In this document: positions 31,523 to 31,630 of the stretch, one piece after another
Layout of the letters: every line of letters begins with the position of its first letter
Position numbering within the stretch: position 1 is the stretch's first letter
Program-made: the position numbers and the translations under genes
Notes under the pieces: generated by a model
Seen by the model: only the letters and a program-made list of their open reading frames with translations
Databases searched by the model: none
Told to the model about the DNA's origin: nothing
NCBI RefSeq assembly: GCF_001194135.2
Contig: NC_069000.1
Location: 39,080,534-39,127,765 of the forward strand
DNA length: 47,232 nt
Source: Octopus bimaculoides
Taxonomy: Eukaryota
Direction: 5' to 3'

Positions 31523-31630
31523 TGCAAGAATGTACTTGACAGTGACTTCGATGTTTCATCCAGTTAACTCAACATCTAAGGTTGTCAAAACTTCGAAGTC
31601 ACTGACAACAACATTCTTACATTAGACTAC
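31523..31630 (+). ncRNA. Candidate pri-miRNA-like hairpin
   Basis: Stem 31526-31556 pairs with 31588-31618 (31 positions, 4 mismatches) around a 31-nt loop. UG at 31523-24 and CNNC at 31627-30 sit at canonical spacing for a 5p start at 31537. There are no expression data. Confidence 0.4.

What the first reader, a model, noticed from the sequence alone, without database searches (positions are those of the whole stretch)
31523..31630. Candidate novel microRNA hairpin with Microprocessor-type geometry and motifs
Seen: AAGAATGT-ac-TTGACAGTGACTTCGATGTTT (31526-31556) pairs with AAACTTCGAAGTCACTGACAA-ca-ACATTCTT (31588-31618). That gives a 31-position stem with 4 mismatches, made of a ~10-bp lower stem and a 21-bp upper stem, in non-repetitive DNA. 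If Drosha cuts before 31537 (5p UGACAGUGACUUCGAUGUUUCA, 5' U, seed GACAGUG) with the 3p end at 31609, then UG lies at -14/-13 and CNNC (CTAC, 31627-30) lies 18 nt downstream. Established: these are the canonical basal-UG and CNNC positions, and coleoid cephalopods have a large lineage-specific miRNA expansion. I do not recognise the sequence as a known family. Caveats: the 31-nt loop is long, and the CTAC lies at the edge of a microsatellite, so it could be chance.
Basis: partly seen in the sequence, partly recalled or inferred. Interest (0 to 1): 0.7.

Follow-up and report, generated by a model that had tools for sequence, protein, structure and literature searches.

The report
Lone inverted repeat, unproven microRNA hairpin
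The hairpin-forming inverted repeat is real and far too good to be chance, but nothing available here shows that it makes a microRNA, and it is most likely an ordinary inverted duplication or small transposon relic in repeat-rich non-coding DNA.

Summary
Positions 31526-31556 pair with 31588-31618 (27 of 31), around a 31-nt spacer. The RNA folds well on both strands: z -6.0 on +, z -6.9 on -, with the - strand more stable. No inverted repeat this good arose in 40 composition-matched random windows, so it came from a duplication-type event.

The proposed Drosha register does place UG at -14 and CNNC at +18. That pair occurs by chance in about 3% of positions per strand once the register may slide by 2 nt. 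The other four described processing motifs are absent.

No Rfam family matches. No seed match to any register of the four possible arms appears in the held tables of the octopus miRNA paper. No paper prints the sequence. No relative exists in the metagenome, viral or protein collections, but none of these holds cephalopod genomes.

Small-RNA reads, conservation and genome-wide copy number are the decisive tests, and none could be run. With about 162 curated miRNA genes per octopus genome and about one such repeat per 20-40 kb here, the prior is well under 1%.

I put a real small-RNA gene at about 10% and a neutral inverted repeat (MITE-like or local inverted duplication) at about 70%.

The parts
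31526..31556 (.). 5' arm of the inverted repeat: an 8-nt lower block, a 2-nt AC mismatch and a 21-nt upper block
   Evidence: (I6). Pairs with 31588-31618 at 27 of 31 positions.
31557..31587 (.). Non-palindromic 31-nt spacer, the loop of the hairpin. It contains GTTAAC. Only 4 of 15 mirror positions are complementary.
   Evidence: RNAfold adds 4 weak pairs on the + strand, leaving an 18-nt terminal loop.
31588..31618 (.). 3' arm of the inverted repeat
   Evidence: (a 2-mismatch reverse-strand match of the 21-mer).
31522..31525 (.). Basal extension ATG-C. It pairs with 31619-31622 (A-CAT). C31525/A31619 is a mismatch on the + strand and a G-U pair on the - strand. It contains the 'basal UG' at 31523-24.
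31619..31622 (.). Basal extension, 3' side
31502..31521 (.). Degenerate outer continuation of the inverted repeat, left side. Outer arm identity is 14/24 against 29% expected (p 0.003), then falls to chance (5/20).
   Evidence: (I6: 55-nt arms, 75%).
31623..31642 (.). Degenerate outer continuation, right side.
31537..31558 (+). Not shown to exist.
   Evidence: Register checked. No expression data available.
31588..31609 (+). Hypothetical 3p product AAACUUCGAAGUCACUGACAAC, with a 2-nt offset to the 5p. Not shown to exist.
31634..31674 (.). (AT)n microsatellite, followed by the assembly gap 31675-32086. Context only, not part of the hairpin.

Best explanation
This is a single imperfect inverted repeat of about 100 to 140 bp in AT-rich, SINE-rich, microsatellite-rich non-coding DNA. 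It was created by a duplicative event: either insertion of a small palindromic MITE-like element, or a local template-switch inverted duplication. It has since diverged by a few substitutions. Because the arms are complementary, a transcript of either strand would fold into a hairpin of about 35 bp. That hairpin inevitably has pri-miRNA-like dimensions.

The most likely state is that the repeat has no dedicated function and is not a curated-quality miRNA gene.

Shown: the repeat, its non-chance origin, its two-strand symmetry, its single copy in the window, and the absence of a match to a known family.

Inferred: the duplicative mechanism, which of the two origins applies, and neutrality.
For: - Non-chance inverted repeat: none at 27/31 or better in 40 Markov windows; z about -6 to -7 for RNA on both strands and for DNA.
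- Symmetry: the - strand folds better (-47.5 vs -36.6 kcal/mol). A DNA-level palindrome gives this automatically.
- The arms differ only by four complement-type transversions. The 31-position stem has no G-U pair. This looks like a fairly young DNA duplication rather than an RNA stem maintained over time.
- The surroundings are repeat-rich: at least 12 copies of a SINE-like family, a TE-like ORF, 64 tandem-repeat rows, and another palindrome, perfect and 62 nt long, 1.8 kb away. Long inverted repeats therefore arise here at about 1 per 20-40 kb.
- There are about 162 curated miRNA genes in O. bimaculoides (PMC9699675). The genome size of about 2.7 Gb is from my own knowledge.
- TA dinucleotides flank 31523-31622, as in Tc1/mariner-type MITEs. 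This is weak evidence in 26% GC DNA.
- No miRNA evidence: Rfam has nothing at gathering score, and the best hit is a plant family at 24.9 bits against a cut-off of 100. The held octopus tables have no matching seed. Only 2 of 6 processing motifs are present.
Against: - There is no second copy in 42 kb of non-gap sequence, so a very high-copy MITE is excluded. A low-copy MITE is untested.
- No clear target-site duplication was found.
- Pairing is best next to the loop and decays outward: 27/31, then 14/24, then 5/20 (Fisher p 0.03). This is the pattern expected if the upper stem were under selection. It is the opposite of a MITE, whose termini are sharpest.
- The geometry, a 5' U and UG plus CNNC all fit one register.
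- Neutrality is an inference from base rates, not a measurement.
Confidence: 0.7

Rival explanations
1. One reading: a young, lineage-specific canonical miRNA transcribed from the + strand. Drosha would cut before 31537 and after 31609. Dicer would give 5p UGACAGUGACUUCGAUGUUUCA and 3p AAACUUCGAAGUCACUGACAAC.
For: - The stem has about 35 positions. The cut lies 13-15 from the basal junction and about 20-25 from the apical one, matching the ~13/~22/~35 rule (PMC7174388).
- The 73-nt precursor is under the <80 nt mollusc limit.
- A 5' U, UG at -14 and CNNC at +18 are present.
- MFEI is 0.94.
- Octopus has 90 novel miRNA families, and the authors say species-specific genes are under-counted.
Against: - UG plus CNNC arise by chance in 0.6% of fixed registers and about 3% when 5 registers are allowed. 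The register was chosen to fit them, and CNNC sits at the outer limit, on the edge of a microsatellite.
- Absent: apical UGU/GUG, the CmR/mGHG motif (-5 is G, and -6/+4 pair), the bulged GWG motif, and a mid-stem bulge, wobble or mismatch at positions 10-12 (the mismatches fall at positions 3 and 16). Position 9 is not U, and U1 is paired.
- The inter-arm loop is 29 nt against a mean of 16.
- The - strand is the better hairpin.
- No seed match appears in the held Data S2/S3 tables of PMC9699675.
- The prior is below 1%.
Confidence: 0.05
2. A hairpin that makes small RNAs but is not a canonical conserved miRNA. It could be transcribed from the - strand (5p UGUCAGUGACUUCGAAGUUUUG) or from both strands. 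The analogy is the human Made1 MITEs that give the miR-548 family, or a short endo-siRNA hairpin.
For: - The - strand fold is more stable and has a 12-bp uninterrupted lower stem, thanks to the G-U pair at 31619/31525.
- UG at -14 is also present on the - strand.
- The palindromic architecture with flanking TA resembles Made1 (Made1/miR-548 is from my own knowledge).
Against: - There is no CNNC on the - strand in any of 9 registers.
- There are no expression data.
- It is a single copy in the window.
- The stem is far shorter than known endo-siRNA hairpins (my own knowledge).
Confidence: 0.06
3. A passive double-stranded RNA structure inside an intron or UTR. It would be bound and edited by ADAR, as are many coleoid hairpins, without yielding a small RNA.
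For: PMC9699675 reports that most A-to-I editing in octopus lies in introns and 3'UTRs, where hairpin ADAR substrates are enriched. A stem of about 31-35 bp with 12 uninterrupted pairs is a plausible substrate (substrate length is from my own knowledge).
Against: Nothing shows that the locus is transcribed. No exon or gene was recognised anywhere in the window: there are no Pfam hits on ten ORFs, no Rfam hits and no tRNAs.
Confidence: 0.1
4. An assembly artefact: a fold-back chimera next to a gap. Or a chance hairpin.
For: The repeat lies 57 nt from a 412-nt assembly gap in a draft with 19 gaps. A perfect 62-nt palindrome nearby could be such an artefact.
Against: Fold-back artefacts give perfect arms with little or no spacer. 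This repeat has 4 internal mismatches, a 31-nt unique spacer and a decaying outer part. Chance is excluded by the Markov null.
Confidence: 0.03

Closest known systems
Canonical animal pri-miRNA hairpins (MirGeneDB definition), including the 90 novel octopus families of Zolotarov et al. 2022
   Same: One hairpin with a stem of about 35 positions. It allows 22-nt arms with a 2-nt offset and has a loop over 8 nt. The precursor would be 73 nt, under the 80-nt mollusc limit. UG at -14 and CNNC at +18 are present in one register.
   Different: No read evidence and no orthologue. Four of the six processing motifs are absent. The loop is about twice the mean. The stem has no wobble pairs. The hairpin is equally good or better on the other strand. 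No seed is shared with annotated octopus miRNAs in the held tables.
Made1-type palindromic MITEs, the source of the human miR-548 family (from my own knowledge)
   Same: A short element of about 100 bp made almost entirely of two arms of about 31-37 nt around a short spacer. It forms a near-perfect hairpin on either strand. TA dinucleotides flank 31523-31622.
   Different: Made1 has thousands of copies and sharp termini. Here there is one copy in 42 kb, identity decays outward instead of ending sharply, and the TA flanks are uninformative in AT-rich DNA.
Quasipalindrome or template-switch inverted duplications (a replication-based mutational mechanism; from my own knowledge)
   Same: A single-copy local inverted repeat with a unique spacer, no coding capacity and no target-site duplication. 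The arms were near-identical at birth and have diverged since.
   Different: The mechanism leaves no signature that can be tested in one sequence. The gradual outer decay is not specifically predicted.

Membership tests
Canonical animal miRNA gene (MirGeneDB criteria) | Hairpin with at least 16 complementary nucleotides between the arms and a loop of at least 8 nt | tested here: met
   27/31 paired plus 3 basal pairs. The spacer is 31 nt and the inter-arm loop 29 nt in the proposed register.
Canonical animal miRNA gene (MirGeneDB criteria) | Stem of about 35 bp, with the Drosha cut about 13 from the basal junction and about 22 from the apical junction; mollusc precursor under 80 nt | tested here: met
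   13 positions (3p side) to 15 (5p side) below the cut and about 20-25 above it. The precursor is 73 nt. Any inverted repeat with about 35-nt arms meets this.
Canonical animal miRNA gene (MirGeneDB criteria) | 20-26-nt reads from both arms, 2-nt 3' offsets, homogeneous 5' ends | not testable with these tools
   No small-RNA data are accessible.
Canonical animal miRNA gene (MirGeneDB criteria) | Presence in a second species, required before a novel family is named | not testable with these tools
   The collections searched hold no cephalopod genomes. The metagenome and viral scans gave only chance 17-mers that extend to 25 nt or less (40 nt in one 80%-identity alignment). The protein route found nothing.
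Canonical animal miRNA gene (MirGeneDB criteria) | Processing motifs: basal UG, bulged GWG, CmR/mGHG, mid-stem bulge/wobble/mismatch at positions 10-12, apical UGU(G), CNNC. These are propensities, not requirements. | tested here: inconclusive
   UG at -14 and CNNC at +18 are present; the other four are absent. The chance of UG plus CNNC is about 3% per strand with register freedom.
Known miRNA or other RNA family | Match to a curated covariance model, or a shared seed with an annotated octopus miRNA | tested here: not met
   Rfam: 0 hits at gathering score across the window. The best local hit is MIR6019 at 24.9 bits against 100. No seed-match k-mer for any register of the four arms appears as a miRNA entry in the held (truncated) Data S2/S3.
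MITE (miniature inverted-repeat transposable element) | Terminal inverted repeats, small size, no coding capacity | tested here: met
   Arms of 31-35 nt, about 100 bp in total. The ORFs across it have no homologue.
MITE (miniature inverted-repeat transposable element) | Target-site duplication at sharp termini | tested here: inconclusive
   Only TA (31521-22 / 31623-24) or TATA candidates were found, in 26% GC DNA. Identity decays gradually outward.
MITE (miniature inverted-repeat transposable element) | Many dispersed copies in the genome | tested here: inconclusive
   One copy in 42 kb, while a true SINE-like family shows at least 12 copies in the same window. This excludes very high copy number only. 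The genome-wide count is not testable here.
hpRNA / endo-siRNA hairpin | Long inverted repeat giving a stem of hundreds of bp (from my own knowledge) | tested here: not met
   The stem is about 35 positions on +, and about 39 on - (12 lower, 21 upper, 6 apical); the 6 further G-U/A-U basal pairs seen when 31510-31640 is folded are replaced by a different basal arrangement when 31490-31650 is folded. Identity is at chance beyond about 55 nt.

The most novel reading that the evidence does not exclude
The repeat is a newborn, octopus-lineage-specific miRNA (or proto-miRNA) caught shortly after its birth from an inverted duplication or palindromic MITE. That would be an invertebrate parallel to Made1 giving miR-548. 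It would offer a concrete source mechanism for the coleoid miRNA expansion, whose origin Zolotarov et al. state is unknown. The better preservation of the inner 31 positions than of the outer 24 would then be the first trace of selection on the duplex.
Probability: 0.07. Interest if true: 0.45.

Novelty: new member of a known kind. Interest (0 to 1): 0.15.

Why it matters
If small-RNA data showed precise processing, this would be one more lineage-specific cephalopod miRNA. More usefully, it would be an example of miRNA birth from a recent inverted duplication. That bears on the unanswered question of where the roughly 90 novel octopus families came from.

As things stand, it mainly illustrates a known point. 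Pri-miRNA-like geometry plus two short motifs is what any 35-nt-arm inverted repeat will show in some register. Hairpin prediction without reads or conservation cannot establish a miRNA.

Tried and rejected
1. Chance hairpin: rejected by the Markov null and the shuffles.
2. Known RNA family: rejected. The whole window gives nothing against Rfam at gathering score, and the local E-value scan gives only generic hairpin hits far below cut-off.
3. Already-annotated octopus miRNA: I searched the held supplements of PMC9699675 for the arm sequences and for 6- and 7-mer seed matches in all registers of the four possible arms. The only hits were rows labelled 'Non-seed kmer'. Those files are truncated, and Data S1 and MirGeneDB itself are not held, so this is partial.
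4. Sequence in the literature: only unrelated 12-mer primer matches.
5. Relatives by DNA: the 17-mer core scanned in metagenome contigs gave at least 120 hits and in viral contigs 11. All are chance, single-arm matches that extend to 25 nt or less (one 80%-identity alignment reaches 40 nt).
6. Relatives through ORFs spanning the hairpin: the ORFs are not on record, and no protein shares words with them. A TE-like ORF elsewhere in the window finds relatives at 68% identity at best.
7. Organism: the window has no tRNA, no Rfam hit and no Pfam hit. The composition, gaps and repeats are consistent with a draft metazoan genome.
8. Target-site duplication search at all symmetric boundaries: only TA-type matches, which are uninformative.
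9. Link to the upstream GC-richer block 31440-31500, which shares TGACAGTG: rejected, because one shared 8-mer is expected by chance.
10. Tc1-like 'CAGTG' terminus inside the arms: rejected, because the inverted repeat continues at least 15 nt beyond it and no TA flanks it.

Full report
**1. What is there**

Positions 31526-31556 (AAGAATGT-AC-TTGACAGTGACTTCGATGTTT) and 31588-31618 (AAACTTCGAAGTCACTGACAA-CA-ACATTCTT) are reverse complements at 27 of 31 positions. They are separated by a 31-nt spacer. RNAfold adds three basal pairs (31522-24 with 31620-22) and four weak pairs inside the spacer. That gives about 35 stem positions and an 18-nt terminal loop. All coordinates in the finding are correct.

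**2. More than chance**

- 31510-31640 folds at -36.6 kcal/mol on the + strand (z -6.0) and -47.5 on the - strand (z -6.9). It folds with z -6.2 as single-stranded DNA. No shuffle did as well.
- In 40 first-order Markov replicas of the window, no inverted repeat reached 27/31 with a loop of 3-60 nt. 24/31 or better appeared 0.025 times per window.
- In the real window only two non-microsatellite inverted repeats reach 27/31: this one and a perfect 62-nt palindrome at 33433-33494.

The repeat is therefore the product of a duplicative or palindrome-forming process, not a random hairpin. Such products occur here about once per 20-40 kb.

**3. Anatomy that bears on origin**

- Arm identity measured outward from the loop is 27/31, then 14/24, then 5/20. 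The middle value is still above the 29% expected (p 0.003); the last is at chance. Inward it stops abruptly, with 4/15 in the spacer.
- The inner versus outer difference is marginal (Fisher p 0.03).
- All four internal mismatches are homo-mismatches (A.A, C.C, A.A, U.U), that is, complement-type transversions. The 31 positions contain no G-U pair on either strand. The only strand-discriminating pair is U31619-G31525 on the - strand.
- 31580-31609 is itself a near-palindrome, though 2.4% of random 41-mers score as high.
- Target-site duplication candidates are only TA (flanking 31523-31622) or TATA, which means little in 26% GC DNA.
- There is no second copy of either arm or of the 830 bp around them in the window. 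A genuine SINE-like family shows at least 12 copies in the same window.

**4. Test of the miRNA reading**

The geometry fits. This matches the ~13/~22/~35 rule summarised in PMC7174388. The precursor would be 73 nt, inside the <80 nt range that MirGeneDB 3.0 reports for molluscs. Its 29-nt inter-arm loop is nearly twice the 16-nt mean.

UG at -14/-13 and CNNC with its C at +18 are present. Their weight is limited:
- In this window UG occurs at a given position with probability 0.07.
- CNNC at +16 to +18 occurs with probability 0.09-0.11.
- Both together occur with probability 0.006 in a fixed register, and 0.03 if the register may slide by 2 nt.

Of the other motifs listed by MirGeneDB 3.0, none is present:
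- No apical UGU/GUG.
- Position -5 is G rather than C, and -6/+4 are paired, so there is no CmR/mGHG.
- No bulged GWG at -10/-11.
- Positions 10-12 are fully Watson-Crick; the mismatches fall at positions 3 and 16.
- Position 9 is A, and U1 is paired.

The - strand is the more stable hairpin and also has UG at -14. It has no CNNC in any of nine registers.

**5. Comparison with what is known**

- Rfam 15 gives nothing at gathering score in the whole window. Locally it gives only generic hairpin hits, the best being plant MIR6019 at 24.9 bits against a cut-off of 100.
- Zolotarov et al. 2022 (PMC9699675) annotated 162 miRNA genes in 138 families in O. bimaculoides, 90 of the families novel. They required presence in a second octopus and note that species-specific genes are missed.
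- The held parts of their supplementary tables list seed-match k-mers for the annotated miRNAs. No k-mer for any register of the four possible arms appears there as a miRNA entry. These files are truncated, and MirGeneDB itself was not available, so this is partial evidence.
- No paper in the library prints the sequence.

**6. Search for relatives**

- The conserved 17-mer core gave at least 120 metagenome hits and 11 viral hits. All are single-arm chance matches extending to at most 25 nt (one 80%-identity alignment spans 40 nt).
- The ORFs that happen to span the hairpin are not on record, and no protein shares words with them.
- A TE-like ORF elsewhere in the window finds only relatives at 68% identity or less. 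This genome is therefore not represented in the protein collection.
- The organism could not be verified either.

**7. Weighing**

The prior that one inverted repeat of this quality is one of about 162 curated miRNA genes is a few tenths of a percent. That estimate assumes tens of thousands of such repeats in a genome of about 2.7 Gb (genome size from my own knowledge; repeat rate).

The motif coincidence is worth a likelihood ratio of perhaps 2-6. The missing motifs, the long loop, the absence of wobble pairs and the strand symmetry pull the other way. The outward decay of pairing is the one observation that mildly favours selection on the upper stem.

My estimates:
- about 10% for any small-RNA-producing hairpin at the locus;
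- about 70% for a neutral inverted repeat of duplicative origin (MITE-like or local inverted duplication, which I cannot separate);
- the remainder for a passive ADAR-substrate structure or an artefact.

**8. Verdict**

The feature is an ordinary member of a known kind, a short inverted repeat or hairpin. Mapping small-RNA reads and running one BLAST against cephalopod genomes would settle it.

Noticed in passing
window 33433-33494: A perfect 62-nt palindrome (31-nt arms, no spacer: AATAACAACAAATGGAGCAAAACGCATGTCG|CGACATGCGTTTTGCTCCATTTGTTGTTATT). It sits beside (TG)n/(ATAC)n repeats, 1.8 kb from the candidate, and is unrelated to it in sequence. It could be a real palindrome or a fold-back assembly artefact.
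   Followed up: partly
window 31534-31610 (mismatch positions 31534/31610, 31535/31609, 31539/31605, 31552/31592): All four differences between the arms are complement-type transversions, giving A.A, C.C, A.A and U.U. There are no transitions or G-U pairs. This is expected by chance only about 1-4% of the time. No mechanism was established.
   Followed up: partly
window 31580-31609: The 3' arm plus the edge of the loop is itself a near-palindrome (GTTGTCA..ACTTCGAAGT..TGACAAC). It can form a small competing hairpin (-8.2 kcal/mol). 2.4% of random 41-mers score as high.
   Followed up: yes
window 4491-4873, 6959-7090, 7402-7574, 7665-7800, 11624-11764, 20591-20943, 21427-21519, 22705-22918, 29520-29624, 34245-34320, 34713-34851: A SINE-like dispersed repeat family with at least 12 copies at 69-90% identity, on both strands. 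Its translations share motifs such as RPRKDERQSRPRRN. There are no Pfam or tRNA hits.
   Followed up: partly
window 14852-15425: A tandem repeat with a 146-bp unit, 3.9 copies, 83% matches.
   Followed up: no
window 43407-43739 (+): An ORF fragment (…FPIEVGCRGFVGNS…) with 47 homologues at 47-68% identity, mostly on short ENA, JGI or Logan contigs. One is named as an uncharacterized protein of Clytia hemisphaerica. It has no Pfam domain and is probably a transposable-element protein remnant.
   Followed up: partly
window, 19 runs of N (e.g. 31675-32086, 33669-34235): Assembly gaps total 5128 N. Several seen directly (e.g. 31675-32086, 8.4-8.9 kb, 38.5-38.9 kb) abut microsatellites, which is typical of a short-read draft. 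The right flank of the candidate, including its CNNC, lies within 50 nt of such a microsatellite and gap.
   Followed up: yes
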